A stretch of DNA of 63,501 nucleotides from Ruditapes philippinarum (lineage: Eukaryota), in contig NW_026865652.1 of the NCBI RefSeq assembly GCF_026571515.1, forward strand, positions 1-63,501, read 5' to 3'. Made by a program: the position numbers and the translations under genes. Below, piece after piece: positions 8,373-62,892 of this stretch; within the stretch, counting starts at the first letter, position 1, and each line of letters opens with the position of its first letter. The notes below the pieces were generated by a model. That model was not told where the DNA came from. It was given only the letters and a program-made list of their open reading frames with translations, and did no database searches.

Positions 8373-9770
8373 TAATAATAATAATAATATCTTTATTTAA
8401 AGAAGGTTACACATTAAGAACATACAATAACAATCATATATATCTTATTTCCAATGTGGCCTTCTGAAATAGAAAACAACAACAACAACAACAACAACAG
8501 GACATGCATAGGTAGAAAAATGAATGTATAATATGTAATATTTAGAATATTACAACTCATATACTTTCGACAGACACTCAACAATTTGTTTTAACATATA
8601 CGTATATTGCATCATTCGTTCGTTCGTTCATTCGTTCGTTCATTTATTAATTAATTAATTCATTCATGCATTCATTCATTCATTCACTCACTCACTCATT
8701 CATTCATATGAACATCAAGATATGCTTTGTATTTTTCTTTAAAACATTTAAGGTTATTAACATTACGAATATTTAAAGGTATATTGTTCCAAATGTTCAT
8801 GCCATAATAAGAAAATGTGTCTTTAATATAGTTTGTTTTAGGTCTTGTCCATAATACAATATCTTTTCGTGACCTAGATCTTAAGTTATATATTTTGTTG
8901 TCGGATAAAGTCATCAGTTCTGTCATATAAGTCGGTGCCATGTTATTTAAAGTTTTAAAAACAAGCACCGCCGTGTGGTATTTACATCTGTCAAGGAACG
9001 GTAACCAGTTAAGAGTTTCGAATAGATTTATTGACGGAGATCTTTGTGGTTGCTGTAAAATGATTTTAGCAATTCGTTTTTGTAATTTACAAACATTATT
9101 TATGTAGTTTGTGTTTCCTTTACCCCATATAATACAACAATAGTCCATAATGGGCAATATATATGCATTGTAAAACAATAATTTCATATCAAAGTGCAAA
9201 AAATACGATATCTTTTTCAATAAGGCAATTTTTCCGTTAAGTTTTTTACAAACATTGTCAATTTGCAAGTGCCATTTTAAGTTGTCATCTATGCAGATAC
9301 CCAAGACTTTGTGATCAGTTACATTTTCAAGAGCTATTTCATTTATCTTAAGATACAATTTTCTCATAATATTTACTTTTTGTCTTGTTCCTATTACCAT
9401 ACATTTTGATTTATCTGGATTTAAGGCCATATTATTTATTTTGCACCATTTGTCAATGTTATTTAAATGATCTTGAAGTTTTATTTCTACTTTTGATATA
9501 TTTTCTCCGGACTCATAAAGAGTAGAATCGTCTGCGTATAAATCAATTTTTATATCATTACCAATGAAAGCTATGTCATTTATGTATATTAGAAATAATA
9601 AAGGTCCTAATATTGAGCCTTGTGGAACACCGGAAATTATTTTCATTGTCTGAGATTGAAGATTACCTATCTTAACCAGTTGTATTCTGTTAGAAAGATA
9701 TGACTTAAAAAACTTAACGACATTTTCAGAAAAATGATAAAGTTTAAGTTTATGCAAAAGTATATTATTG
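8373..9770 (-). mobile_element. 5'-truncated CR1/L2-group LINE, copy 1
   Basis: RT ORF 8696-9757; 3' UTR with GAAT/GAAC and GTT microsatellites, AATAAA and a (TTA)n tail; near-identical to 35164-36240. Confidence 0.9.
8696..9757 (-). CDS. LINE ORF2 C-terminal part (reverse transcriptase), truncated
   Basis: GVPQGSILGPLLFLIYIND, LYADD, YNLRS and FSY.G...WN.IP motifs typical of CR1/L2-group RT. Confidence 0.9.
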   Translation of the reverse strand: MHKLKLYHFSENVVKFFKSYLSNRIQLVKIGNLQSQTMKIISGVPQGSILGPLLFLIYINDIAFIGNDIKIDLYADDSTLYESGENISKVEIKLQDHLNNIDKWCKINNMALNPDKSKCMVIGTRQKVNIMRKLYLKINEIALENVTDHKVLGICIDDNLKWHLQIDNVCKKLNGKIALLKKISYFLHFDMKLLFYNAYILPIMDYCCIIWGKGNTNYINNVCKLQKRIAKIILQQPQRSPSINLFETLNWLPFLDRCKYHTAVLVFKTLNNMAPTYMTELMTLSDNKIYNLRSRSRKDIVLWTRPKTNYIKDTFSYYGMNIWNNIPLNIRNVNNLKCFKEKYKAYLDVHMNE

Positions 9771-29920: not shown

Positions 29921-30238
29921 AACATTATAAAAGTAAACATTACTTTAACAAACATGACATTAAACATTTGACCGTAGAAATGTGTCTTTAAAGTAGGGCA
30001 TTATAAGACAGAAAATCGTGTAGACAGCTCAATTTACCGGACATAGCATTTCGATTTTTTTTTGAAATCGTGAATTGAAATTAATCTTTAAATTTCAATT
30101 CAATTCAAATTTTATTGCATTTTTCGACAAAACTTTGCCTTTGGCAATACATACAAAACATACATAAATCACTTGAAATATGACATACATTCAATACAAA
30201 TACACAATGTTCACATAAAGTGCAGAAACATATCAAAT

Positions 30239-33200
30239 TTACAATTCTTGCATTGTTTCTAAAACACTAGATCTTAATGCGAATGCTTTATCTAAAAATT
30301 TACATAGTTGCAATATTCTACTTTTATTTCCTGATGACATAATAGAATAGAACTTATTTAAAGTTGGAAAAGATACATGTTTTATAAAAGATTTTCTCAG
30401 TTCTGAATATAAGGGACAACCTCGAAACAAAACTGTGTTTTATATTTCTTATAGTAGTCAAGCTTTGGCATATTATCTATACAGTCATGCCACTGTTGTA
30501 AAAATTGATCTCTTATTCTCTGCTTAAATAACATATTATAATTGACATTAACTGCATAGTCATAAATAATGTACGGGAAGCCCATATCAGTAATAACAGA
30601 GTGAACGCGTTTAGCCCAGCATTTTTCATTCCCATTAATACATTGGTCTAAATAAATATGGTATATAGGCGCCTGCTGGCGCTTAACGATTTTATTCCAA
30701 AATTGTAAAGCTCTTTCCTTACATAGAACAGACAAAGGAAATTTACCTAGTTCCCCATAGATAGCACAATTTGGGGTCTGTCTTTTGACACCTAAAACAT
30801 ATTTATAAAATCTTATCTGTAGTTTATCAATATCTTTCAGCTTATATATACCCCAAACCTCTGACCCGTATAATAAGATTGGAGCTACCATTCTTTCAAA
30901 TAAGTATAATTTTGTTTTAACATCGAATTTAACTCTATCAAAGAGTGCGAGAAGATTGTGGTAAGCTCTTAAACCTTGATCTGATAGTGCTTTCACAGCT
31001 TCAACAAAGCTACCTGTGTAAGAAAATTTCACTCCTAAATATGTAAAACTATCTACTTTTTCAACCAATTGACCATTTATAAATAAATTAAAATTATGGA
31101 CTGACTTACGTTTTTCAAATACACATATTTTAGTTTTATTAACATTTATCTTCAAACCCCAATTACATGAATATTCAAAAACATTATCAACTTGTGCCTG
31201 CAAGCTTGCAGGGTCAGTTGTAAACAACACAATATCATCCGCAAAAAGTAACAAATATTTAGATAAAAGGTTTAGGTCGTTGTTAGACATTTTGTTAAGA
31301 TCTATACACTGATCAATATCATTAAGGAATAAAATAAAAAGCAAGGGAGATAATGGCTCGCCTTGTTTTAAGCCTAGAGTTACCTCAAAAAAATCAGAAA
31401 AATTTGATTTAGAATCAATTTTGACACAAGATAATACAGAAGAGTAAATGGATTTTAACATAGTAACCATTTTACAGCTAACGCCATTTTCAATCAATTT
31501 AATCCACAATGCATCTCTTATTACAGTATCAAACGCTTTTTCATAATCTATGAAAATACAATATAGTTTTGATTTGTTGTCAAGTATCTTCTGGATAAGG
31601 GAATGTAGAATAAAAATAGCGTCAGCTGTAGATCTAGAATCTCTAAAACCAAACTGTACATCGTTAAAAATTTGTTCTGATTCACACCATTTATTTAACC
31701 TATTACGTAGTACTAGGGAAAATATTTTTGCCATACAATTTACTAACGTGATGCCACGGTAATTTGAAGGATTTTCGGGATCACCTTTCTTATAAATAGG
31801 TACAATTACCCCTTTACACCATGCTTCTGGGTAAATGCCAGTCTCAAAGATTTTATTGAAAATAGTACACAAATATGGGCTTATAAATATATTAGCATCA
31901 ATGAAAAAGTCAGCAACAATATTTAAATAATCAGCACTCTTATTTCTATTCAACGAAGATATAGTTTTCGACACTTCCTCCACACTGATCGGACAATCTA
32001 ACTGGTCAATATATAACGGTGCATCACGTGACTGAATAAAATCGTCTGCATTAAAATTACTGTGCTGCAAATTAGAAATATTTGAAAAATGGTTAACAAA
32101 ACTATCTGAATCTAAGTTGTTTCTATCCGACGGGCTACGTTTGAATTTATTTATGTATTTCCAAAACTTACGCGGTGAGGTTTTTGACATTTGTGACATA
32201 TTAATTTTTTCTTTAGAGTAAAATATCGCTTTTGCTCGTCTCTTAACCTTTATATATTCCCGTCTACTTGACAAGAATAACAACTTATTATCATTACACT
32301 TATTTACATTAAAGGCTCTTTTTTTATTCAAAAAATCTGCTTTAGCATTTCTGCAATTCACATTAAACCAGGCAGCTTTTTTAACCTTTTTACAAGGCTT
32401 TTGACAAAATGTTTTCCCAAAGCACTTAAAAGAGATTTCAAAAATTTCGTCGGACAAAGAATTTACACAATTATCAACATCAGTTTCGCCCAACACAAGT
32501 TTCTGTGACAAATTGTCAAATATATGCCTTTTTGCCTCCAATAGATTTAAAAAAGATTCTGTTTCATCGCTGTTCCATATAATTTTTTGTTGTTTTTCAG
32601 GTCTGGTATAATTAATATTTAAATCATTTTTGTAGCTTATTGAAAAAGAAATTGGGCAGTGATCAGAAAACTCAGTCATGTCCATAACACATACGTCATT
32701 TAAAGATGAAAAATTCTCAAACTTTGTTATTAAATAGTCTACTGTACTCTGTGTCGATCTGTTTCTATATTTAGAATGAAAAGTACAATCGCCGGGTTCT
32801 AGCCGGCCATTAACAATACGTAGGTTATTTTCTTTACACATTGACAATAATTTGTTTCCAAAAGAGTTCACATGAGTGTCCGTATTTTTACGTGTTGTGG
32901 TGCTTTCTTCCACTTCCGGTGGGAGAACTACATACCGGTCCAAGTTAATATTGTCTACGTAATCGGGTTTTTCACCCGTCCTCGCATTATAATCTCCCGT
33001 ACAATAAACATGCCCTAGGTCACTATATTTACGGATTTCTTCATTGAGGTTATCAAAAAAATCATATTCAAATAAGGTTGAGTTAACATTTTTATAAACA
33101 TATGAGTCTTCCGGTGGTATATAGCAAGTACTAATATAAATGTCTTTATCAGATCCAAAACATTCTTTTTTAAGCTTAAGCCAAATTATTCCTTTGTTAT

Positions 33201-33477
33201 TAATGCTCACTATTTCTAATTTATTAATAAATTTTTCCTTATAATATATAACTATGCCACCGCTATTCCGTTTTGCTTTCGATTTACTATTTGGTCTTGG
33301 GCAGTTTGCATACTCAAACCCATTAATTTTTAAATTCGAAAATTTAGATGTCCATGCTTCCGTCAGAAGTAGTAAATCATAACCAGAAATAAAGTTTAAA
33401 AAATCACTATCATTCAGTTTAGAATTCAAGCCTTGTATATTCCAAGAGAGTACATTTAGGTATTCCCATGAGGGTTC
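30239..33477 (-). CDS. LINE ORF2: APE endonuclease plus reverse transcriptase (frameshifting deletion near C-terminus)
   Basis: SWNIQG, LTEAW, GDYNAR, VDY, SDHCP (APE); NYRGITL, QFGFR, DYEKAFD, GLKQGEPLSP, LFADD, YLGV (RT). Frame is open from the ORF1 stop to 30397; the true C-terminus is in the 30239-30430 frame. Confidence 0.92.
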
Positions 33478-34390
33478 CTAATGTATATTGCCGGGGGCAG
33501 CAGTTTCCATTCGTGTCGGGTTACTATTAGTTCCAGTACCGGGTAAAGATGTAAGGTTCTCAATCTCTGGTATAGGAAGCGCGTCAACCGTGTACATTTT
33601 ATTGTTAACGTATAGCTTATCAACATGTAGACTAGCACGTATGCCTGCTTCACGCGCTTTCTTAAGGGACGGATATAGTAATCTACGACGCTGTTGCACA
33701 ATAACCGGATATTGGTCACTAACACTGCGATTGGACAAATCACTGTTGTCAAAGACTCTCTGTTTTATATTTATCTTATCTTTGAAATAGTTGAATTTTA
33801 CGACAATGGGTCGTCTTTTATTAACTTTGTATTGCCCAATTCGGTGCGCTCTATCAATTTTAATAGATTCATCCGCGTCATTCATATTGAGTGTTTCTTT
33901 ACAAAATTTAAGGATTTTTGCTTCACAATTTTCCTCCTTGCGCTCTGTAGCGGTTTCACACTCGGCAAAGTCGTAGAAAAGTAGATTATCCCGCATTGAT
34001 CTTGTTTGAATATCAATCAAATCTTCCGATACCCGGTTATGATCACAGATCAAAGACTCGTAATCCTTGCGGATTGCCTGGTGACTCTTTTTGTTTTGGT
34101 CTAACTGTTTATCAATTGAAAGCTGTTTTGCTTGAATTTCGTCACATGAACTAGAGTCGTACGCTCTACTGGCCTCAATTTCGGTGATTTGACTTTGACA
34201 ACTGTTCACTTTTGTTTCGAGAAAAGTCACTTTAGTGTCAATGGAGGTCATTTTCTGTGTCAAATTAGATATTTGCTTCTCAATATTGTCTAGCTTTTGA
34301 AGTTTCGTATCAAAAATTTCAAATTTTGAGTCAATTTTATTTTCAAGTTTTTCAAATAAAAGTTGAATGTCTACGCTGCCAATGCCAGGT
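33478..34390 (-). CDS. LINE ORF1 (coiled coil plus L1-type RRM/CTD), N-truncated
   Basis: Heptad-rich region then RSMRDNLLF, IDRAHRIG, RPIVVKF, SDQYP, DKLYVN; frame stays open upstream of 34263 to about 34400 without an ATG. Confidence 0.85.
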
Positions 34391-35312: not shown

Positions 35313-36240
35313 GGACATTCATAGGTAGAAAATGAATGTATAATATGTAATTTTTAGAATAATACAACTCATATACTTTCGATAGGCACTCAACAATTTT
35401 TGTTTAAACATATATGTATATTGCATCATTTGTTCGTTCGTTCATTCGTTCGTTCATATATTTATTCATTCATTCATTCGATCACTCATTCATTCATATG
35501 AACATCAAGATATGCTTTGTATTTTTCTTTAAAACATTTAAGGTTATTAACATTACGAATATTTAAAGGTATATTGTTCCAAATGTTCATGCCATAATAA
35601 GAAAATGTGTCTTTAATATAATTTGTTTTAGGTCTTGTCCATAATACAATATCTTTCCGTGACCTAGATCTTAAGTTATATATTTTGTTGTCGGATAAAG
35701 TCATCAGTTCTGTCATATACGTCGGTGCCATGTTATTTAAAGTTTTAAAAACAAGCACCGCCGTGTGGTATTTGCATCTGTCAAGGAACGGTAACCAATT
35801 AAGAGTTTCGAATAGATTTGTTGACGGAGATCTTTGAGGTTGCTGTAAAATGATTTTAGCAATTCGTTTTTGTAACTTACAAACATTATTTATGTAGTTT
35901 GTGTTTCCTTTACCCCATATAATACAACAATAGTCCATAATGGGCAATATATATGCATTGTAAAACAATAATTTCATATCAAAGTGCAAAAAATACGATA
36001 TTTTTTTCAATAAGGCAATTTTTCCGTTAAGTTTTTTACAAACATTGTCAATTTGCAAGTGCCAATTTAAGTTGTTATCTATGCAAATACCCAAGACTTT
36101 TAGATCAGTTACATTTTCAAGAGCTATTTCATTTATCTTAAGAATTAATTTTCTCATAATATTTACTTTTTGTCTTGTTCCTATTACCATACATTTTGAT
36201 TTATCTGGATTTAAGGCCATATTATTTATTTTGCACCATT
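35164..36240 (-). mobile_element. 5'-truncated CR1/L2-group LINE, copy 2 (ORF 35486-36220)
   Basis: Near-identical to 8373-9450 including 3' UTR and (TTA)n tail. Confidence 0.9.
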
Positions 36241-37468: not shown

Positions 37469-40400
37469 TATGCTGGTGGTATAAAAGAAACACTGCTGAT
37501 AGAGTTTGCGCATTTTGGACACTTGATAAAGGACAAGCCGAATGAAAGCACACTTAATGCGTTTGATTACCTTGAACTTGACGATGCCGATTTATCCGAG
37601 ATTGAAGAAACAGCAGGTGAAACTATACAGTCGCTGTCAGTCAAAGCAGAAATGCCAAGCAAACGTCGAGAGAGGCGTATGTGTAATTTGTCTCCATGTT
37701 CTTCAGATAAAACAATAAATTACAACTCAAAACATGATTTTGACAACTTATCATTTTACATAAAATATAAAATTTATATACAGATTATACTTAATAACAA
37801 CAAATAGTTACAAAATCTACCAAAATCGACCGCCTTTCATTTCAATTCGCATTTGTTTCGTTACACAAGTCACACTTAGAACTACTATGAAGCCTTGAAC
37901 ACTTAATCAATAATGTTTCATACATCAGCTCGCCATCTTTTTATAATAAATTACCATTTGTCACATTAAAACATTATCCTTTTCTTAAAATTCCTTACTT
38001 TATACAGACCGATTCATAACACATATGTAAGACATTTTGTAAATTCTTATTCCAGAAATGAGGGTCGGCGGTGCAAATATATCACCATTAACTGATACGC
38101 TCAAATCTACCGCAGTACAATCTATTAATCAACAAAGCAAACGACAGTCTGACGTGACTGCCACTCCCCAAACCAGCAGTCGACCTATCAGACAGCAAAC
38201 TTTAACAGTAAAAGGACGACACCCGCTTACAATACAATCATCTCCATTGGACAAAACACAACAATCATTTAATTACTTTCAGAAAAGGCAAGAAAGCTCA
38301 TTACAACACCAAGAAGACTTTGGCGTCTTAAAAAATATCTCTCCTGCGTTCAAAAACAGATCTCGGGAGAGATCAGATTCTCTTGATTTCGATGACGATT
38401 TCATATCAGAGACAGGCGATTTAAAAGGAGAAAACCTCGAGGAAGAACAGCTTAGAGAAAAGCATGAATACTTTGGCGAAGAATTTTATCTTTCGGACCT
38501 GAAGGACCATTGCAAAGGTCATCTAAAGGGCACAAAAGAGATACTTCAGCAAAAGAAGAAAGACCTGCATGAACGTCGGGAAGAAGCTAAACGCCAAAAA
38601 GAAGAGAGAGGAGGAAATAGTGTGAAAATAAGCATACTCCCAGAACTACCAAAACTTGATAGTGAAGATTTCGAGGCGTTCAGAATGCATAATGAAACAA
38701 TAAAAATGCCTGATGAATTACCTACACTTGAAGAATTTATAGAATTTTTTAAATCTGATGAGGATTACGACCCTAGATACAAAAACAAAGTCCGACAAAA
38801 GAGTAAGAAAATTGCTGAGAGATACTATAAAGAAAGGGAAACGCACAGATCTAACATATCGTTTACTATTGGGAATATTCCAGAAGAAATAAGAAACATT
38901 AATACATATCGCCGTTGTACACGCAAACAATCATTTACTCGAGGAAACAAACAGAAAGATAATTCTGAATGTAAAGGCAAGGGGAATACCGGTATCACTC
39001 GTACGTTAGCTGTTCAAGAATCTGATCAACAACGTAGGAATATACCTCAACTTCAAGATAAAAAAAGAACGGATTCTATGTCAAATATTTACGAACATGG
39101 ACAAGAGGTTCTCGGAATCACCGACTCTGAACCTTGCAAAGATCATTATATCAAAGGAAACAGGCACTTAGTAGTGGAGAATATTGAAAAAGACCATTCT
39201 ACACCTAGAGAAAAGGATAATTCTGAACGTAAAGAACAAACTATTTCTACACCTAGAGAAAATGATAATTCTGAACGGAAAGAAAAAACTATTTCTACAC
39301 CTAGAGAAAATGATAATTCTGAACGGAAAGAAAAAACTATTTCTACACCTAGAGAAAATGATAATTCTGAACGGAAAGAAAAAACTATTTCTACACCTAG
39401 AGCTGAACGTAAAGAAAAAACTATTTCTACACCTAGAGAAAATGATAATTCTGAACGTAAAGAAAAAACTATTTCTACACCTAGAGCTGAACGTAAAGAA
39501 AAAACTATTTCTACAACTAGAGAAAAGGATAATTCTGAACGTAAAGAAAAAACTATTTCTACGCTTAGACAAAATGATAATTATACACCATGTTTGAAAA
39601 ACACAATATTCCCAAAGATACAAATGTGGTCTGATAATGAAACTGACTCGTCCGATACCGGCTCTAATGAGTCATCAAGTAGTGAATCATTGGAAGAAAG
39701 TTTTGATACTAAGAAGCTTAACATGAAGTATAGCGTTGAACGTCTCAAAAAGAAACGACGCAGTAAAGTGAAAAAGAAAGGCGGGTTTATTAAAGTCCTC
39801 GAAAAGTACTACACCATGCAGAATGCTCTCAATGTCTTCAGCAAAATCTCGCCGGTTAAAAGTGTCAAGAAAGGGCGACTAAAAACACGTCCATTTGGCA
39901 AGAAAAAGCAGCAAGGTAAAACTCTCAGTTTTGACTTCTTCGTGAAAAAATCTGTATGTACGAGCTTATATTATATTTGATTTCATATGCACAATAATTT
40001 TGCAAATAGTTTCTGTATGTATAGATTTCAACCAAAGAGGATAACTAACCAAATGCGAAATGAAAAGATAATATATATTTTCTCATATTAAAAATAGTCT
40101 CAAGTTAATTTTGAATTGTTTTTCAAACAAACAAAAAACTTTAAGATGTTATATGAGAAGAACACAGTTAAACATAATTAAATAGTGCATGTACTAAGTA
40201 AAAATATGTGTTATTTGTACATTGAATCTTAAATGTATAAATTGGACGATGGATAACGAATGACAGTTGCTTAGTGCTTTCCCATCCCTCCTGCCAACAT
40301 TACTTCTACTCTCTCACCATATTACTTCTGCACTCTGATGTATAAATTTAATGGATAAGTTGTACATTTTCAGATAAACAAAAGGAAGGGGAGCAATGTG

Positions 40401-57600: not shown

Positions 57601-58335
57601 TTATGAAAAATAACATCTTTGCCTGCAGTTTTCTGGATCCAAGTTTTTTTTATGGCAGTTTAAAGCACTTGAAATAGTTTGAGTCTGCTGATCAAAATAA
57701 TGTTGCCAGGTCTTGTCTACAGTGAAAATCCTATCTAAAATGTGACAACTTCAACACAATACTAGAGACTCAAAAACAAAAACAGGTTGGAACATTACTT
57801 CTTTTGCTTCAAAAGTTATGTTGTAGAAACTAATTGTTTACAGATGTACATTCTAACAAGACAGTACTTATGTGGCTATATTTTGTTCTTTTAAGCCATA
57901 CAAAGGAAAATAGCCACATAAAAGCATACAGAATGAATGGCATCAAAGGAAAAGCACATGCCAATGCTTTTGCGACTCTGTTAAAATGGTATTGCATGTT
58001 TGTGCATATACAAATGTATTTTTACAGAACAGAACAGAACAGAACATGAATTTTATTTTAGATTTGAGCATTTCGCTCCTCATCCATAACATAATTATAC
58101 ATTATTATGTCAAAGTCAAACAATATAATGATATAACACAATATTGAAAATGACAGTATCTGTGGTACAAATGACAAAAGAAGGTATAGAATATGTATTC
58201 AGTATCATTTAACGTGAAATTCTTAACGTACATGACAATAAATTGAGCATTTATTTATTTATTATATATTTATTAATTATTTATTGTAAAAGATTATGCC
58301 TAATTCTTAATGCACAATTTAGGAAACAAACTAAA

Positions 58336-61300
58336 TTATTCAACATTTTTTTCATTTCTGGTTGACAACAACTGGGTAAGTTTAAACATAGATGGTCTTT
58401 CATAATAATATTTATCAATGTAACGTTTTCTTATAAGTCTGTAGCAGGGACACACACAAATCATATGGAATTCATCCTCAATGTCTCTGGATTGACATAC
58501 ATTGCATGTTCTTTTGCCTCTTTCAATTCTATTTTGACCATATCGTCCGGTTTCAATCCTAAGGCAATGTGCAGATATCCTAAACTTGGTAATAGCTGAT
58601 CTATAATTTTTTCTACTTAAGATACTCAAATACTCAGCATATTCAATATGGTGCTTTAAATGTTTATATAAATGTAATACTTGATTGCTCTCTAAATCGC
58701 TACTCCAATTCTGTGTGAATGTATCAATCAGTCTTTGTCTGAACAGAGTTATAAAGTGGTTCACATTTACTGTTAACGGTGTTTCAAACACGTATCCAAA
58801 GCCATGTTCATATAATAACTTCTTTACTTTTGAAACCCAGTTAATCTTATTATTACATAAATCCTCTATAACAGTTCATATACTTTACTTATTATACAAT
58901 TATTAGAATTTGTGATCTTAAGAAAATACTTGACTATTTTAACATTTCTGTTTACATACAACGGATATCGTCCTAATTCTCCATATATAGCTACACTACT
59001 GGACGATAATTTTACATTTAGAATTCTTTTGCTAAATTTATCCTTACAGTGTCTTTTTTAAAGTAAATTCCCGATTTTTAAAAGAGTAACTTAAAATTGA
59101 GGAAACAAATGAATCAATTAAACTCAACATTGTCTTTGGTGTAAAATGAAAGTTCTTTGTATTAATTATTAAACAATTCATAGCTTTAAGCGCCTTGCCG
59201 ACGAACATCTGTGTATTATAGTTAAAATTGCCATTTGAGTCAAATACCACACCTAAATAGCTGAAATTGTTAACAATAGCTAAATTTGTGTCATTGTAAG
59301 TCCATTTTTCATTTTCACGCAACGGTCCACGCTTTCTAAAAACCATAACTTTGGTTTTTTCAATGTTAACGGTTAATCCCCATCGCCTACAGTATGTGAG
59401 CAAGTCATCTAAACTTTGTTGTAATCCTTCTACAGTGTCCGAAAATAGTACCATATCGTCTGCGTATAAAAACAGCACCAGAGTCAAATCATCAAATTTT
59501 AAGCCACTTTCTGGTCTCGAACCAATGTACAACTCTAGATCTTCAATAAACATAGACCACAATAACGGTGAACATATCTCTCCCTGTTTTAGGCCCACTG
59601 CTATTTCCATGAAGTCCGAGAATTCGTTTCCATGACGTACTCTACATTTCACTTGCTCATACATTGATCTTATGACCCTGAGCAATTTACCGTTTATTCC
59701 CAGTTTTGACATTTTGAACCACAATGCGTTCCGGTATACACTATCAAAACATTTTTGCATATCTATAAAGGTAGTGTAGAGGCGTGTACCATTATTTAAC
59801 ATGTGATTAACTATACTGTGTAGGCAAAATATCGCATCAGTGGTTGATAATCCTTTCTTAAATCCAAATTGTGAATCTGATATTATGTTATGTCTATCAC
59901 CCCAGTCTGACATTCTCTTATTTAATATTGATGTGAATATTTTCGACATAGAACTAACTAGTGTTATTCCCCTATAATTATCGACAATACTAGCATCTCC
60001 TTTTTTAAACACTGGTATAATGATTCCTTCCATCCATGCATTTGGAAAATGTCCAGTCGATAGTATAACATTGAAAATATCCCGTAGATGCCCGCATATG
60101 ATGTCACATGTTTCAATAAAATATTCATTTATGAGGTCATCACTCCCACCTGCCTTGCCTCGTTTCAAACAACTTAATTGCATGTCGCACTTCATCAATT
60201 GTAATTACAGAATCTAATTCGCGAAAATAGGGTCATCATAACAATATTGGTTATTGCAGTAATTCTCACTTTCTGGATCAGTAGTAGTGTTAATGCTATC
60301 TGATAAATTCCTAAAATAGTGACAGAATTCTTGCACAGATATGTTTTCGTTCAGTTGTGTTTTTTTTCTTTGAAAAATATTTCCAGAAATCGCACGGCCT
60401 TTTACTTTTAAGTGCTTCAATTTCTCGCATCTTTATAAGTTTACTCCTATTGCGCTTTACTTTTATCAAAGATTTATATTGTCTCTTTTTTAACATTAAC
60501 TGGTGTCTATTTTCATTTGTCTTCACTTCATTAAATAATCGTAATGCTTCCAAATACTCTAACTTTCTTTCTCTGCACGAGTCATCAAACCAATCTGATT
60601 TTTTCATCACTTTTGTAGTATCAAATTGTATATTTTGTTTTCGCATGGTTAATTCCTTGTGAAACAATGGCTTTGCCTCTTCGTTTATTATTTGTGCGAA
60701 TCTGTCAACCATTTCATTTACTTTGATGTTATCAAATACTTCCTCCTCTGAATAGCTTATTAAATTGTTTAATTCAGGCAATCTGCCAATCAATCTTCTT
60801 CTAAAAGTATCTCTTTTATCTGCAGACCATTTCGTTGACTGTAAAGATTTTAAATTGCTATCATCTCGTGTTATAGTGTTGATTGAAATAGTAAATTCTA
60901 TAATTGCATGGTCTGAAAATATATTAAAATCAGAAATATTAAACGTTTTAATATATTTAAAATTGCACTGTTTAGCAAGAAGGTAATCTATAACAGTACT
61001 CCCATTGTATCCACAATATGTATACGGTCCTGTCGATTCTAATCGACCGTTACATATTCTTAAACCGGTCGCTTTGCACATGTCTAATAACTGTAAACCG
61101 TAAGAATTAAACTGTGTATCCATAGACGTGCGATCAAGCGGGATGTCTGGCACGTAGTCATCTCCGTCCAAAATTGAGTTCATTCTGTCATATTCGATAA
61201 AATCCGGTTTAAGTCCAATTCGGCTATTCATATCTCCAGAAACCAATACCGTTCCTCGTTGACTAAAAAAGCTTATATCATTTTCTAAAATGTCAAATAA

Positions 61301-61705
61301 ATTTTGATTACATACATTATAAGCAGGCGAATCTTGTCCCCATATATAAGTGGCACATAGATATATGTCTTTATCTAACATAAAGAATGATTTATCCAGC
61401 TTTATCCATATGATTGTGTCAAAGTGATTTCTAATAATTGAAATTCCTTTCGCTATATAGTCTCTGTAAAACAACATAATACCACCACTACTTCGACGTG
61501 CATTTCTGTGTTGAAATTTGCGATAGAAATTGTGCGATGCATATCCTTTCAATTTTATATTACTATCTTTAGATGTCCATGATTCTAGAAGAAAAATAAT
61601 ATCATATTTAGATACTATATTACAGAAGTCTTCGTCCTCTTGTTTCTCTTTAGATAAGCCATTACAATTCCATACGGCAATCGAAACTACACCTTCTTGT
61701 AATTC
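58336..61705 (-). pseudogene. LINE ORF2 (APE-RT-CCHC-like) broken by several frameshifts
   Basis: WNCNG, LESW, GDMNSR, IDY, SDHA; NYRGITL, QFGFK, GLKQGEICSP, LYADD; RISAHCLRIETGRY...CNVC...EDEFH...CP spread across ORFs 60311, 60214, 59044 and 58336. Confidence 0.9.
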
Positions 61706-62781
61706 CTACGGTACCGTCCCATACGGACCATCTGTATACACTTTACCATCCACGATAAGTTTGTTATATTTGATATATGCTTCCTTTTTTGCCTCTCGAG
61801 CCCTTTTCATAATTGGAACAAGTAATTTCCTTTGTGAAACAACTTCCGGCGGATATTGATCATGCATGAATAGTCCAGATTCTCTAGGATTGACATTATC
61901 TTTGAATGATTTTACGTAGTTTTTTGTCTTAAGGTTGTTGAAAGTAACTAATACATTTTTTGGCTTACTTTGTCTTCGAACGCCAATTCGTCTAGCACTC
62001 TCTATTTCTAGTGTTGCCAAACTTTCCTCGGGGATCTTCAAATCGTCCTGAAAGTATTTTTTGACATTTCCAAGTGTCTGTTCGGCTGTTTCATCCTTTG
62101 ATTCTTTGATCCCACCAATGATCAAATTACACATCATAGACTTAGCTTGGATATCAATAATAGTCTCTTTTAATTTCTTATTTTCAGACTGTAAAATTGA
62201 TACCTGCTCTTTTGTTTTATCCAAATTAAAATCATGTAATTCCACCATGTCCTCCACGGAACTTAATTTATCCTCACTTTTAGCCACTCTTTTATCTAAA
62301 TCAGACCATAACTTATTGAGTTTATCATCCAGTTTTGTAACCTTTTCCTCCACCGATTCTAATTTATTGAGTCTAGTGTTCATTTCCTCAAATTTTCCAC
62401 TAATGAATTTCATCAATTCCTCATTTGTTACTTGTTTTATGCGTTGAAACTCATATGGAGATGTCGCTCCGACATTTTGTGTACATTCTTGCGTAAAATT
62501 CGTTGGCATAACAGACACAGGCGTTCGACACTGATTACTGTACGGTAGTTGTACATATTGCTGAGGGTTATAGTTCATCCCGTTATTGCCTTTAATCTGA
62601 TCCATAGTATAACAATCCGTATTGTTAGAATATATCTGATCATTCACCGAAATGTTTTCCGAGTTTAGTAACTGTAAATATGTACTATTCCCTTGTGAGC
62701 GATTTTCAGCTGTTAGTGTACTGGACAAAACCGTGTCGTCACAAGTTTTGACCTCTAACCTTCTAGAGTCTTTTGTTCCCC
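61706..62781 (-). CDS. LINE ORF1 (coiled coil plus L1-type RRM/CTD)
   Basis: Heptads, KSMMCNLIIGGIKE, IESARRIG, HDQYPPEV..QRK.L, YNKLIVDG; frame open up to the truncation point. Confidence 0.85.
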
Positions 62782-62892
62782 TATTTTACATGATGTCATT
62801 TGTGTCACACAACATAAGCTTAAAGATGTGCTAAATGTTTGCCTAACAATATAAGCACATCATTGAAAAAGAGATTCTTTTCACAGCATTCA

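What the first reader, a model, noticed from the sequence alone, without database searches (positions are those of the whole stretch)
61640..61730. Second, highly divergent LINE has the same TAG-GAA in-frame ORF1/ORF2 junction
Seen: GGG ACG GTA CCG TAG GAA TTA CAA GAA GGT GTA GTT TCG ATT GCC GTA TGG AAT TGT AAT GGC. Again a single TAG, then GAA, then the WN.NG motif exactly 11 codons after the stop as in element 1, and no in-frame ATG for about 76 codons (past WNCNG and LESW). The two elements differ widely in protein sequence and tail repeat, so shared stop type, next codon, frame and spacing are unlikely to be chance decay. UAG-GAA-UUA differs by one base from the TMV readthrough signal UAG-CAA-UUA (established motif CARYYA).
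Basis: partly seen in the sequence, partly recalled or inferred. Interest (0 to 1): 0.8.

Follow-up and report, generated by a model that had tools for sequence, protein, structure and literature searches.

The report
In-frame UAG between LINE ORFs
A large group of clam jumping genes (LINEs) carries its two protein-coding parts in one reading frame, separated only by a conserved UAG stop codon and with no start codon for the second part, which suggests that the second protein is made by occasionally reading through that stop, much as some retroviruses make their polymerase.

Summary
On the minus strand, element 2's ORF1 ends in a single TAG (61706-61708). ORF2 continues in frame, and the first endonuclease motif WNCNG starts 12 codons later. 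The first in-frame ATG is codon 77.

In this genome I sampled 45 junctions; 43 have TAG. They fall into 32 sequence families, and the endonuclease N-terminus is as little as 35% identical between them. The base after TAG is G in 30 of 32 families. No family has an in-frame ATG before the motif. As a control, the ORF2 stops of 11 of these families are TAA 6, TGA 3, TAG 2. Related LINEs on metagenome contigs show the same in-frame stop: TAG in 13 families, TAA in 3, TGA in 2.

Some details do not generalise. GAA is the next codon in 11 of 32 families, the spacing ranges from 9 to 13 codons, and the TMV-type CARYYA signal occurs in 0 of 32. I found no local RNA structure, reinitiation motif, 2A peptide or in-phase splice donor.

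ORF1 folds like human L1 ORF1p. My best reading, at about 0.5, is low-level UAG readthrough giving an ORF1p-ORF2p fusion. AUG-independent reinitiation is the main rival. The RNA data were uninformative. The scan had noted the same feature on other DNA (s1-804628).

The parts
61706..61708 (-). Element 2: the single in-frame TAG that ends ORF1. It is the only stop between ORF1 and the endonuclease domain.
   Evidence: conserved in 23 of 25 related copies
61709..62785 (-). Element 2 ORF1: coiled coil, RRM-like domain and C-terminal domain. In this copy it is 5'-truncated about 20 codons after the family's ATG.
   Evidence: fold of a relative's ORF1 matches human L1 ORF1p
61673..61705 (-). Element 2: the 11 codons between the stop and the motif (E L Q E G V V S I A V). 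There is no ATG here. The first base after the stop is G.
61658..61672 (-). Element 2: W-N-C-N-G, the first conserved motif of the AP-type endonuclease
   Evidence: Pfam Exo_endo_phos, residues 11-266 of the piece after the stop
60314..61705 (-). Element 2 ORF2, endonuclease part. It is open for 464 codons after the TAG and then broken by a stop at 60311-60313.
59047..60198 (-). Element 2 reverse transcriptase part. It lies in another frame, so this copy is broken.
   Evidence: RVT_1, E 3.9e-36
58339..58791 (-). Element 2 C-terminal ORF2 piece with a Cys/His motif (C-x2-C ... H ... C-x-C)
   Evidence: translation
58024..58046 (-). Element 2 3' tail: (TGTTC)4 plus TGT
33478..33480 (-). Element 1: the in-frame TAG between ORF1 and ORF2
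33481..34263 (-). Element 1 ORF1. The open frame runs further upstream, and there is no family-type ATG in this copy.
30400..33477 (-). Element 1 ORF2: 1026 codons open directly after the TAG, with endonuclease and RT. Relatives have about 1140 codons.
30094..30108 (-). Element 1 3' tail: (TTGAA)3

Best explanation
These are APE-type LINEs with an L1-like ORF1 protein (coiled coil, RRM, C-terminal domain). ORF1 and ORF2 form one continuous reading frame of about 1500 codons, interrupted only by a UAG. Shown: the architecture and its conservation. Inferred: most ribosomes stop at the UAG and release ORF1p. A small fraction, on the order of 0.1-1% (my estimate from what is generally known of basal readthrough, not measured), decodes UAG with a near-cognate tRNA and continues into ORF2. 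That would give an ORF1p-ORF2p fusion, the LINE counterpart of retroviral Gag-Pol. Through its coiled coil the fusion would join ORF1p trimers on the same RNA. This would set the low ORF2p:ORF1p ratio and keep the enzyme on its own transcript. The only signal appears to be the stop's identity and its immediate context, UAG-G-(A/G). I found no local stimulatory RNA structure.
For: (1) Stop identity is conserved where stop codons otherwise turn over. 43 of the 45 junctions that entered the family count have TAG (38 small pieces plus 7 longer loci), and they fall into 32 sequence families. The ORF2 stops of 11 of those families are TAA 6, TGA 3, TAG 2. Fisher p = 1e-7 if families are counted as independent. 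At a comparable two-fold site, the invariant Asn of the W-N motif, both codons occur (AAT 25, AAC 7). (2) No family has an in-frame ATG between the stop and the endonuclease motif (0 of 32). Three longer loci have none within 133 codons, so ORF2 cannot start at an AUG without losing its first catalytic motif. (3) Several copies have both frames open with the TAG as the only interruption. Examples are 388 codons + TAG + 1139 codons on contig C8522, and L015, L021 and L038, each open to the end of the fetched piece. (4) Relatives on metagenome contigs keep the in-frame stop after an ORF1 homologue in the same frame. After my filter there are 18 families: TAG 13, TAA 3, TGA 2. More distant LINEs have TGA-C after 266-332 open codons. 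(5) The last 14 residues of ORF1 are predicted disordered. The residues on both sides of the stop are rich in S/T/G/D/E, as expected of a linker. (6) ORF1 folds like the trimeric human L1 ORF1p (Foldseek E 1.5e-7, TMt 0.66). (7) Signals for other mechanisms are absent: no overlapping stop-start AUG, TGGGA at chance level (4 of 32), no 2A NPG (0 of 32), and no conserved in-phase splice donor.
Against: There is no protein, ribosome-profiling or reliable RNA evidence. The known stimulators of readthrough are missing. CARYYA occurs in 0 of 32 families. The base after the stop is G in 30 of 32, and by my recollection G is not a leaky context unless a downstream structure is present. The 96 nt after the stop fold no better than shuffles (mean z 0.03; 0 of 32 below -2); pseudoknots and long-range pairings were not modelled. 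Three metagenome families have TAA, the least leaky stop; one of them, L155, has no ORF1-like sequence upstream. For mammalian L1, ORF2 is reported to be made without a fusion and independently of its AUG (passages of PMC5972666, PMC5009743 and PMC2241872), so a fusion is not needed in principle. Conservation of the frame is not decisive, because both sides of the stop are coding under the reinitiation model as well. The 32 families share ancestry, so the p-values overstate independence. I chose the 40 sampled junctions from 150 scored hits, and they are not a random sample.
Confidence: 0.5

Rival explanations
1. Termination followed by AUG-independent reinitiation. Ribosomes terminate efficiently at UAG-G and a fraction resumes at the next codon or codons without an AUG, giving a separate ORF2p. 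This would be a spacer-less version of the unconventional mechanism proposed for mammalian L1.
For: G after the stop in 30 of 32 families is, by my recollection, a strong-termination context. There is no readthrough stimulator. L1 ORF2 translation is described as independent of its AUG and without a detectable fusion (passages of PMC5972666 and PMC5009743; PMC2241872). TAA occurs in some related metagenome families.
Against: It gives no reason why the stop should stay TAG in all 32 clam families while ORF2 stops vary. There is no stop-start overlap. ATG lies within -4..+9 nt in 2 of 32 families, both out of frame. There is no TURBS-like TGGGA enrichment (4 of 32) and no downstream structure of the kind reported for SART1. 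The first codon after the stop is never a near-cognate start: GAA 11, GAT 6, GAC 4, GGG 3, GGA 2, GGT 2, and GCC, TGG, GAG and CAT once each.
Confidence: 0.3
2. TAG|G is a 3' splice site. A donor shortly after the ORF1 ATG is spliced to it, removing ORF1 and giving a subgenomic mRNA in which the ORF1 ATG heads ORF2.
For: The invariant AG preceded by T and followed by G (30 of 32) matches a YAG|G acceptor. The model would explain why TAA is avoided and why ORF2 has no ATG. One family (L038) has TCT|GTAAGT in phase 0 at codon 19 of ORF1.
Against: None of the 5 full-length families has a donor matching 7 or more of 8 consensus positions after the ORF1 ATG. GTRAG sites occur at chance frequency, and one lies in phase near the 5' end in only 1 of 5 families. 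The 22 nt before the TAG are 50% pyrimidine on average (range 0.32-0.77), so there is no polypyrimidine tract. Related families with TAA cannot be acceptors. No joints were seen in the laid runs, but RNA coverage was almost nil.
Confidence: 0.07
3. RNA editing. ADAR converts UAG to UIG (read as Trp) in part of the transcripts, as at the amber/W site of hepatitis delta virus (recalled), giving a fused frame.
For: U-A-G is a favoured ADAR triplet (recalled). Another note of this scan reports ADAR-type scars fixed in LINE copies of this genome (s1-810586; not checked by me). One decayed copy has TGG at the site (L033).
Against: Copies are made from the RNA, so if the translated and edited RNA were the one copied, TGG should be common among the daughters. 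Of the 37 copies that span the junction have TAG and 1 has TGG. No double-stranded structure is predicted around the site (window from -45 to +51, mean z -0.01).
Confidence: 0.03
4. Chance or decay: the TAG is a random nonsense mutation in an originally single ORF, or an ordinary ORF1 stop of no special meaning.
For: The window copy of element 2 is dead.
Against: The same stop lies at the same place in 32 families of this genome and in relatives on metagenome contigs, with both flanking frames open. ORF2 stops vary.
Confidence: 0.01

Closest known systems
Gammaretroviral (murine leukaemia virus) gag-pol expression by UAG readthrough (recalled, not read here)
   Same: A structural RNA-binding protein ORF and an enzymatic ORF lie in one frame, separated by a single UAG that is followed by G. 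A minor fusion product would set the stoichiometry and co-assemble with the major product.
   Different: MLV needs a pseudoknot about 8 nt downstream. I found no local structure signal here. These are non-LTR elements with an L1-type ORF1p, not Gag. No fusion protein has been shown.
Mammalian LINE-1 ORF2 translation by unconventional termination/reinitiation (Alisch et al. 2006, seen only as cited in PMC5972666, PMC5009743 and PMC2241872)
   Same: A bicistronic LINE RNA with an L1-type ORF1p (fold match). ORF2 expression does not depend on an AUG, and very little ORF2p is needed.
   Different: L1 has a spacer of about 60 nt with two in-frame stops and an ORF2 AUG (PMC2241872 passages). Here there is no spacer, a single stop of conserved identity and no AUG.
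SART1 (silkworm) UAAUG stop-start coupling (Kojima et al. 2005, seen only as cited in PMC5972666, PMC3894237 and PMC3708506)
   Same: There is no intergenic region, and ORF2 translation is coupled to ORF1 termination.
   Different: SART1 has an overlapping AUG and a downstream structure. Here no family has an overlapping in-frame AUG (0 of 32) and no structure signal was found.
2A/StopGo leaders of single-ORF LINEs (Rex1, L2, CR1, Ingi clades; PMC3708506, PMC3894237)
   Same: Translational recoding at the N-terminal border of ORF2 lowers the ORF2p yield from one long frame.
   Different: No NPG(P) motif is present in any of the 32 families. A stop codon takes the place of the skipping peptide.
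Arabidopsis ATLN LINEs (Noma, Ohtsubo and Ohtsubo 2000, DNA Res 7:291). I recall that orf1 and orf2 were reported in frame across an amber codon. The paper is not held, so this is unchecked.
   Same: If my recollection is right: a LINE with an in-frame amber stop between the ORFs and a proposed suppression of that stop.
   Different: They are plant L1-clade elements with poly(A) tails. The present case is an animal (bivalve) group of dozens of families with microsatellite tails, and it has an internal control on stop-codon turnover.

Membership tests
APE-type (young) LINE | ORF2 with an N-terminal AP-endonuclease domain followed by a reverse transcriptase domain | tested here: met
   Pfam Exo_endo_phos and RVT_1 in both elements. 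The RT matches L1 ORF2p and R2 chains.
L1-type (type II) ORF1p | Coiled coil followed by an RRM and a C-terminal domain, as in human L1 ORF1p | tested here: met
   The AF2 model of L038 ORF1 has helices at 95-221 and an alpha/beta part at 224-366. Foldseek finds 2ykp, 2yko and 2ykq at E 1.5e-7, TMt 0.66.
L1-type (type II) ORF1p | Sequence membership in Pfam Transposase_22 | tested here: not met
   Transposase_22 is not among the families listed for the 7 ORF1s at E up to 1 (member 1's full table and the 25 most-matched of 79 families). A PDB profile search finds L1 ORF1p only at E 0.07.
Type I readthrough signal (TMV-like UAG-CARYYA; motif recalled) | The hexamer CARYYA directly after UAG | tested here: not met
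   0 of 32 families. Element 2 itself has GAATTA.
MLV / type III readthrough signal (recalled) | UAG followed by G | tested here: met
   30 of 32 families
MLV / type III readthrough signal (recalled) | A stimulatory structure or pseudoknot a few nucleotides downstream | tested here: inconclusive
   RNAfold of the 96 nt after the stop gives mean z 0.03, with 0 of 32 below -2. Pseudoknots and long-range pairs were not modelled.
Gag-Pol-type readthrough expression | Detection of a fusion protein, or of ribosomes passing the stop | not testable with these tools
   No proteome or ribosome-profiling data were available. The RNA runs were uninformative.
Termination-reinitiation (SART1, calicivirus, influenza B type) | A stop overlapping or adjacent to an AUG (UAAUG, AUGA) | tested here: not met
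   No in-frame ATG lies between the stop and the W motif in any of the 32 families. An ATG in any frame lies within -4..+9 nt in 2 of 32.
Termination-reinitiation (calicivirus TURBS; motif recalled) | An upstream UGGGA motif complementary to 18S rRNA | tested here: not met
   TGGGA lies in the 100 nt upstream in 4 of 32 families, against about 3 expected by chance.
Mammalian L1 inter-ORF arrangement | A spacer of about 60 nt with in-frame stops, followed by an ORF2 AUG | tested here: not met
   There is no spacer. 9-13 codons lie between the stop and the first endonuclease motif, and there is no ATG.
2A/StopGo LINE leader | D(V/I)ExNPGP at the start of ORF2 | tested here: not met
   NPG is absent from the ORF frame of all 32 junction pieces.
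   No Repbase or Dfam references were at hand. An element length of about 5 kb fits RTE-X (mean 4937 bp) and equally CR1-Zenon (5204 bp) as given in PMC10294476 (passages).

The most novel reading that the evidence does not exclude
A whole, ancient, bivalve-rich group of LINEs (dozens of families here, with relatives in marine metagenomes) makes its endonuclease/reverse transcriptase only as a Gag-Pol-like ORF1p-ORF2p fusion. It does so by unstimulated readthrough of a conserved UAG. ORF2p would then be delivered into the ORF1p trimer on its own RNA, which would give a physical basis for cis-preference. More distant LINEs with in-frame UGA-C would use the same strategy.
Probability: 0.45. Interest if true: 0.75.

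Novelty: new variant of a known kind. Interest (0 to 1): 0.62.

Why it matters
How LINE ORF2 is translated from a bicistronic RNA is a long-standing open question. The reviews I read call it unresolved (PMC3894237, parts 1-2; passages of PMC5972666 and PMC5009743). This group offers a very simple natural arrangement: one frame, one stop of fixed identity, no AUG, no spacer and no obvious RNA structure. A short reporter can therefore separate readthrough from reinitiation. If the fusion exists, it would bring LINEs into line with retroviral Gag-Pol logic and would suggest a mechanism for cis-preference. There is also a practical point. Annotation pipelines that require an ATG-initiated ORF2, or that score the stop as damage, will misjudge which copies of these bivalve LINEs are intact.

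Tried and rejected
TMV-like CARYYA context: 0 of 32 families, rejected as the signal.

Exactly 11 codons and GAA as general rules: rejected. The spacing is 9-13 codons, and GAA is the next codon in 11 of 32 families.

Local RNA structure after the stop: no signal.

TURBS-like motif, stop-start overlap and 2A motif: absent.

Splice-acceptor reading of TAG|G: no conserved in-phase donor and no polypyrimidine tract.

RNA evidence:
- X22, a raw-read RNA run, gave 1 read.
- X20, labelled RNA-Seq, covered the whole element on both orientations. Its loose ends start at GATC sites, so it looks like a proximity-ligation or DNA library, and I do not count it as RNA.
- X1 and X3 are contigs of uncertain kind. 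One 1677-nt contig crosses the junction without a gap.
- No joints were reported in any run.

ORF1 by sequence: Pfam gave only coiled-coil noise and the PDB sequence searches were weak. The fold search settled it.

Clade assignment (RTE-X versus CR1-Zenon, L2 or other): not possible without reference elements.

None of the papers I opened from them describes an in-frame stop or readthrough between LINE ORF1 and ORF2; for the rest I saw only titles and abstract starts, and searches did not list all their hits. Noma et al. 2000 is not held. Supplementary files, for example the curated bivalve LINE library of PMC10294476, were not seen and may bear on the claim.

Rows dropped before counts:
- 5 of 30 loci did not span the junction.
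- 18 of 30 did not span it.
- L070 and L072 (no motif) were left out, and L062 (TAA) and L084 (TGA) were set aside before clustering. Their peptides after the stop match the L064 and L088 families, so they are decayed or rearranged copies of TAG families.
- 9 of 80 metagenome loci had no usable match, and 46 of the 71 usable ones failed the filter. Most of these were other LINE types or truncated copies.

I did not run the search for homologous proteins or the search of protein representatives. Gene predictions stop at the TAG, so they could not show the junction.
Full report
WHAT IS AT THE COORDINATES. The finding lies on the minus strand. ORF1 of a LINE (window 62785-61709) ends in TAG at 61708-61706. 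The frame continues with GAA TTA CAA GAA GGT GTA GTT TCG ATT GCC GTA and then TGG AAT TGT AAT GGC. Pfam places an AP-endonuclease domain at residues 11-266 of the piece after the stop and a reverse transcriptase further on. The first Met after the stop is residue 77. This copy is dead. Compared with a full-length relative (L002, ORF1 starting MGPKRERKRK...) it is 5'-truncated about 20 codons into ORF1. Its ORF2 has a stop at 60311-60313, and the RT lies in another frame. Its tail is (TGTTC)4.

Element 1 (window 30400-34263, minus strand) has TAG GAA at 33480-33475, the same 11 intervening codons and 1026 open codons of ORF2. Its tail is (TTGAA)3. The two elements share 33% identity over the ORF2 N-terminal part and 30% over ORF1.

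COPIES AND FAMILIES IN THE SAME GENOME. I searched the genome with 701 nt around each junction and aligned the hits that span the junction.
- For element 2's group, 25 of 30 loci span the junction. TAG stands in the same column in 23 of these 25. One copy has a 7-nt deletion and one has GGG. The group comprises three families about 69% identical in DNA: CCG TAG GAA TTA, GCG TAG CAT ATT and GCG TAG GAT ATA.
- For element 1's group, 12 of 30 loci span the junction, and 9 of the 12 have TAG. One copy has TAA, one has TGG and one is indel-ridden. The group includes a second family at about 69% identity: AAA TAG GAA ATA.
- A tblastn walk over all 60 loci found two more families, with TAG GAC GAC and TAG GGG CGT.

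I then searched the genome with the 130 residues after the stop of the most outlying family. This gave 2939 candidates, of which 150 were scored. I therefore fetched 40 pieces of 331-370 nt, chosen for spread of identity (63% down to 35%) and for long open frames. This is not a random sample.

In 36 of the 40 pieces the first in-frame stop upstream of W-N-x-x-G is TAG. In 32 of those 36 the same frame is open for 58-79 codons upstream, that is, to or near the edge of the piece; the other four (L080, L096, L074, L076) are open for 14, 17, 76 and 76 codons. Most pieces show an ORF1 C-terminal motif of the type DKL(F/Y)I(D/N)G. The four exceptions are as follows. L062 (TAA) and L084 (TGA) have peptides after the stop that match TAG-bearing families, so they are decayed or rearranged copies. 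L070 and L072 lack the motif.

I clustered the 43 TAG junctions (36 pieces plus 7 longer loci) at 85% identity over 105 nt. This gives 32 families. All have TAG. The next base is G in 30 and the base after that is A in 23 or G in 8. The distance to W is 11 codons in 19 families, 12 in 8, 13 in 3, 10 in 1 and 9 in 1.

CONTROLS.
- In 11 of these families with an open ORF2 of about 1134-1144 codons, I fetched 63 nt around the ORF2 end. The stops are TAA 6, TGA 3, TAG 2, and several are followed by a second stop. Over the same evolutionary depth, an ordinary stop codon turns over and the ORF1 stop does not. Fisher p = 1e-7 if families are treated as independent, which they are not.
- At the invariant Asn of the W-N motif, a comparable two-fold site, both codons occur (AAT 25, AAC 7). 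All four Gly codons occur at the motif's G.
- Dead copies with TAA, TGG or GGG at the site show that the mutations do happen.

BEYOND THIS GENOME. I scanned metagenome contigs with a profile of the seven N-terminal pieces and got 80 loci. Of these, 71 had a usable match. 25 passed a filter requiring the motif within 16 codons of the stop and a same-frame upstream ORF of at least 60 codons, or one open to the contig edge. They form 18 families: TAG 13, TAA 3, TGA 2. Among the families that also carry the ORF1 C-terminal motif, TAG has 9 and TAA 2 (L124; L125 with L142).

So the in-frame stop is older than this genome. TAG dominates but is not absolute. More distant LINEs in the same set have in-frame TGA followed by C after 266-332 open codons: L161 TGA CGG, L160 TGA CGA, L184 TGA CTA, L171 TGA CTT. 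Many others show no such arrangement.

SIGNALS AROUND THE STOP.
- CARYYA follows the stop in 0 of 32 families.
- The first codon after the stop is GAA 11, GAT 6, GAC 4, GGG 3, GGA 2, GGT 2, and GCC, TGG, GAG and CAT once each.
- TGGGA lies within 100 nt upstream in 4 of 32 families, which is about chance.
- The 96 nt after the stop fold no better than dinucleotide shuffles (mean z 0.03; 0 of 32 below -2). The same is true of windows upstream of and centred on the stop.
- No in-frame ATG lies between the stop and W in any of the 32 families. In the longer loci the first ATG is at codon 76, 21, 21 or 45 (counted from 0), or is absent within 133 codons in three families.
- NPG (2A) is absent in all 32. 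An ATG in any frame lies within -4..+9 nt in 2 of 32.
- The splice-acceptor reading of T-A-G|G was tested. Pyrimidine content at -25..-4 averages 0.50. None of the 5 full-length families has a donor matching 7 or more of 8 consensus positions after the ORF1 ATG. GTRAG sites occur at chance level, and one lies in phase near the 5' end in only 1 of 5.

READS. No listed holder of the element is on record as RNA. I laid four runs on window 58300-62800.
- X22, a raw-read RNA run, gave 1 read.
- X20 is labelled RNA-Seq. It covered all 30 bins on both orientations, with loose ends starting at GATC sites. It looks like a proximity-ligation or DNA library, and I do not count it as RNA.
- X1 and X3 are contigs of uncertain kind. 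They include one 1677-nt contig that crosses the junction without a gap.
- No joints were reported.
The question of a spliced or subgenomic RNA therefore stays open on the RNA side.

ORF1. Pfam and PDB sequence searches gave only coiled-coil matches, plus L1 ORF1p at E 0.07. The protein atlas listed L1 ORF1-type clusters at score 0.89, which is a lead only. An AlphaFold2 model of a full-length ORF1 (L038, 385 residues, with a 7-row alignment) has mean pLDDT 70. Residues 1-93 and 372-385 are disordered, a long helix spans 95-221, and an alpha/beta part spans 224-366. Foldseek finds the human LINE-1 ORF1p trimer (2ykp, 2yko, 2ykq) at E 1.5e-7 and TMt 0.66. ORF1 is thus an L1-type coiled coil-RRM-CTD protein with a disordered tail that runs up to the stop.

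MECHANISM. Shown: one frame, one stop of conserved identity, no AUG, no spacer, and conservation across dozens of families and beyond this genome. Inferred: the identity of the stop matters, which points to something that reads the UAG. The simplest candidate is a near-cognate tRNA competing with release factor. This would be low-level readthrough giving an ORF1p-ORF2p fusion that joins ORF1p trimers, like Gag-Pol in Gag assemblies. Very little ORF2p is thought to be needed (PMC3894237), so no stimulator may be required.

Against this stand the non-leaky context (G after the stop, by my recollection), the lack of any stimulator, the TAA families elsewhere and the L1 precedent for AUG-independent reinitiation without a fusion. 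I put readthrough at about 0.5, reinitiation at about 0.3, splicing at about 0.07, editing at about 0.03 and chance at about 0.01. The rest is unassigned.

Editing is unlikely for two reasons. Copies are made from RNA yet keep TAG: of the 37 copies that span the junction have TAG and 1 has TGG. And no duplex is predicted at the site.

LITERATURE. I read parts 1 and 2 of 3 of PMC3894237. It lists SART1 coupling, IRES, reinitiation and 2A as options for ORF2, and calls the question open. I found no mention of readthrough in those parts.

I saw passages only of the following:
- PMC5972666, PMC5009743 and PMC3708506.
- PMC4120745, which reports L1-type ORF1s in several CR1 and L2 subgroups.
- PMC2241872, which describes the rat L1 60-nt spacer with two in-frame stops and no fusion detected.
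- PMC5203782, PMC2861651 and PMC11203168.
- PMC10294476, which describes RTE-X, CR1-Zenon and Proto2 as bivalve-rich and defines autonomous elements from ORF2 alone.
- PMC3747384, used for the reference to Noma et al. 2000.
None of these passages describes an in-frame stop junction in LINEs.

The ten searches turned up no paper whose title or abstract start pointed to such a report; I opened only the eleven papers above. I recall that Noma et al. 2000 reported an in-frame amber codon between orf1 and orf2 of Arabidopsis ATLN elements, with proposed suppression. The paper is not held, so this is unverified. If my recollection is right, the idea has a plant precedent, and the present case is a new animal variant with stronger comparative support. 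Alisch 2006 and Kojima 2005 were seen only as cited by others.

EARLIER NOTES OF THE SCAN. Another first-stage note on a different piece of this genome says the same thing: ORF2 without a start codon, fused in frame to ORF1 across a single UAG (s1-804628, no follow-up). Another agent's note calls the organism a clam and describes 2A leaders on LINE ORF2s (s1-808174). A third reports ADAR-type scars in LINE copies (s1-810586). I tested none of these on their own DNA.

LIMITS. The 40 sampled junctions were chosen, not drawn at random. Families share ancestry. I built no tree with mapped changes. Pseudoknots and long-range RNA pairs were not modelled. The clade name (RTE-X or other) is open. There is no expression or protein evidence.

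Noticed in passing
L160, L161, L171, L184 (metagenome contigs): More distant LINEs have an in-frame TGA followed by C (TGA CGA, TGA CGG, TGA CTT, TGA CTA) after 266-332 open codons in the ORF2 frame. By my recollection, UGA-C, UGA-CGG and UGA-CUA are classical leaky contexts. This would fit a wider use of in-frame stops in LINEs.
   Followed up: partly
L124, L125, L142 (metagenome contigs): Two related families carry TAA instead of TAG at the same in-frame position (TAA GAT, TAA GGG). The ORF1 homologue lies in the same frame and 82-378 codons are open upstream.
   Followed up: partly
L013, L018, L026, L029 (contigs C804 and C14819): In this derivative, similarity to element 2 begins just after the stop (TAG ATT GAA GAA GGT...). 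Upstream lies unrelated, short-ORF sequence. Three copies sit on one contig. It may be an ORF1-less or chimeric relative.
   Followed up: no
run X20 laid on window 58300-62800: This run is labelled RNA-Seq, but 308 of its 455 laid reads fit only in part, and the loose ends start at GATC sites (58598/58601, 59538/59541, 59669, 60279). Coverage is even on both orientations. It looks like a proximity-ligation or DNA library.
   Followed up: no
window 30397-30450 and 58336-58791: Element 1's ORF2 stops after 1026 codons and lacks the C-terminal Cys/His motif seen in element 2 (C-x2-C ... H ... C-x-C). Relatives have about 1134-1144 codons, so element 1 is probably damaged at its 3' coding end.
   Followed up: partly
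L002, L015, L021, L038, L048: Full-length ORF1s start with a basic, NLS-like stretch (MG.K.ERKRKNSSKGETPK in three families). It is followed by a low-complexity region that is predicted disordered.
   Followed up: no
window 8696-9757 and 35486-36220, minus strand; 35440-35500: Two near-identical RT C-terminal fragments of a different LINE family lie here. The second is followed by a (GAAT/GAAC)n-type microsatellite tail.
   Followed up: no
window 38058-39980, plus strand: A 640-codon ORF contains tandem repeats of the peptide STPRENDNSERKEKTI. It is not related to the LINEs.
   Followed up: no
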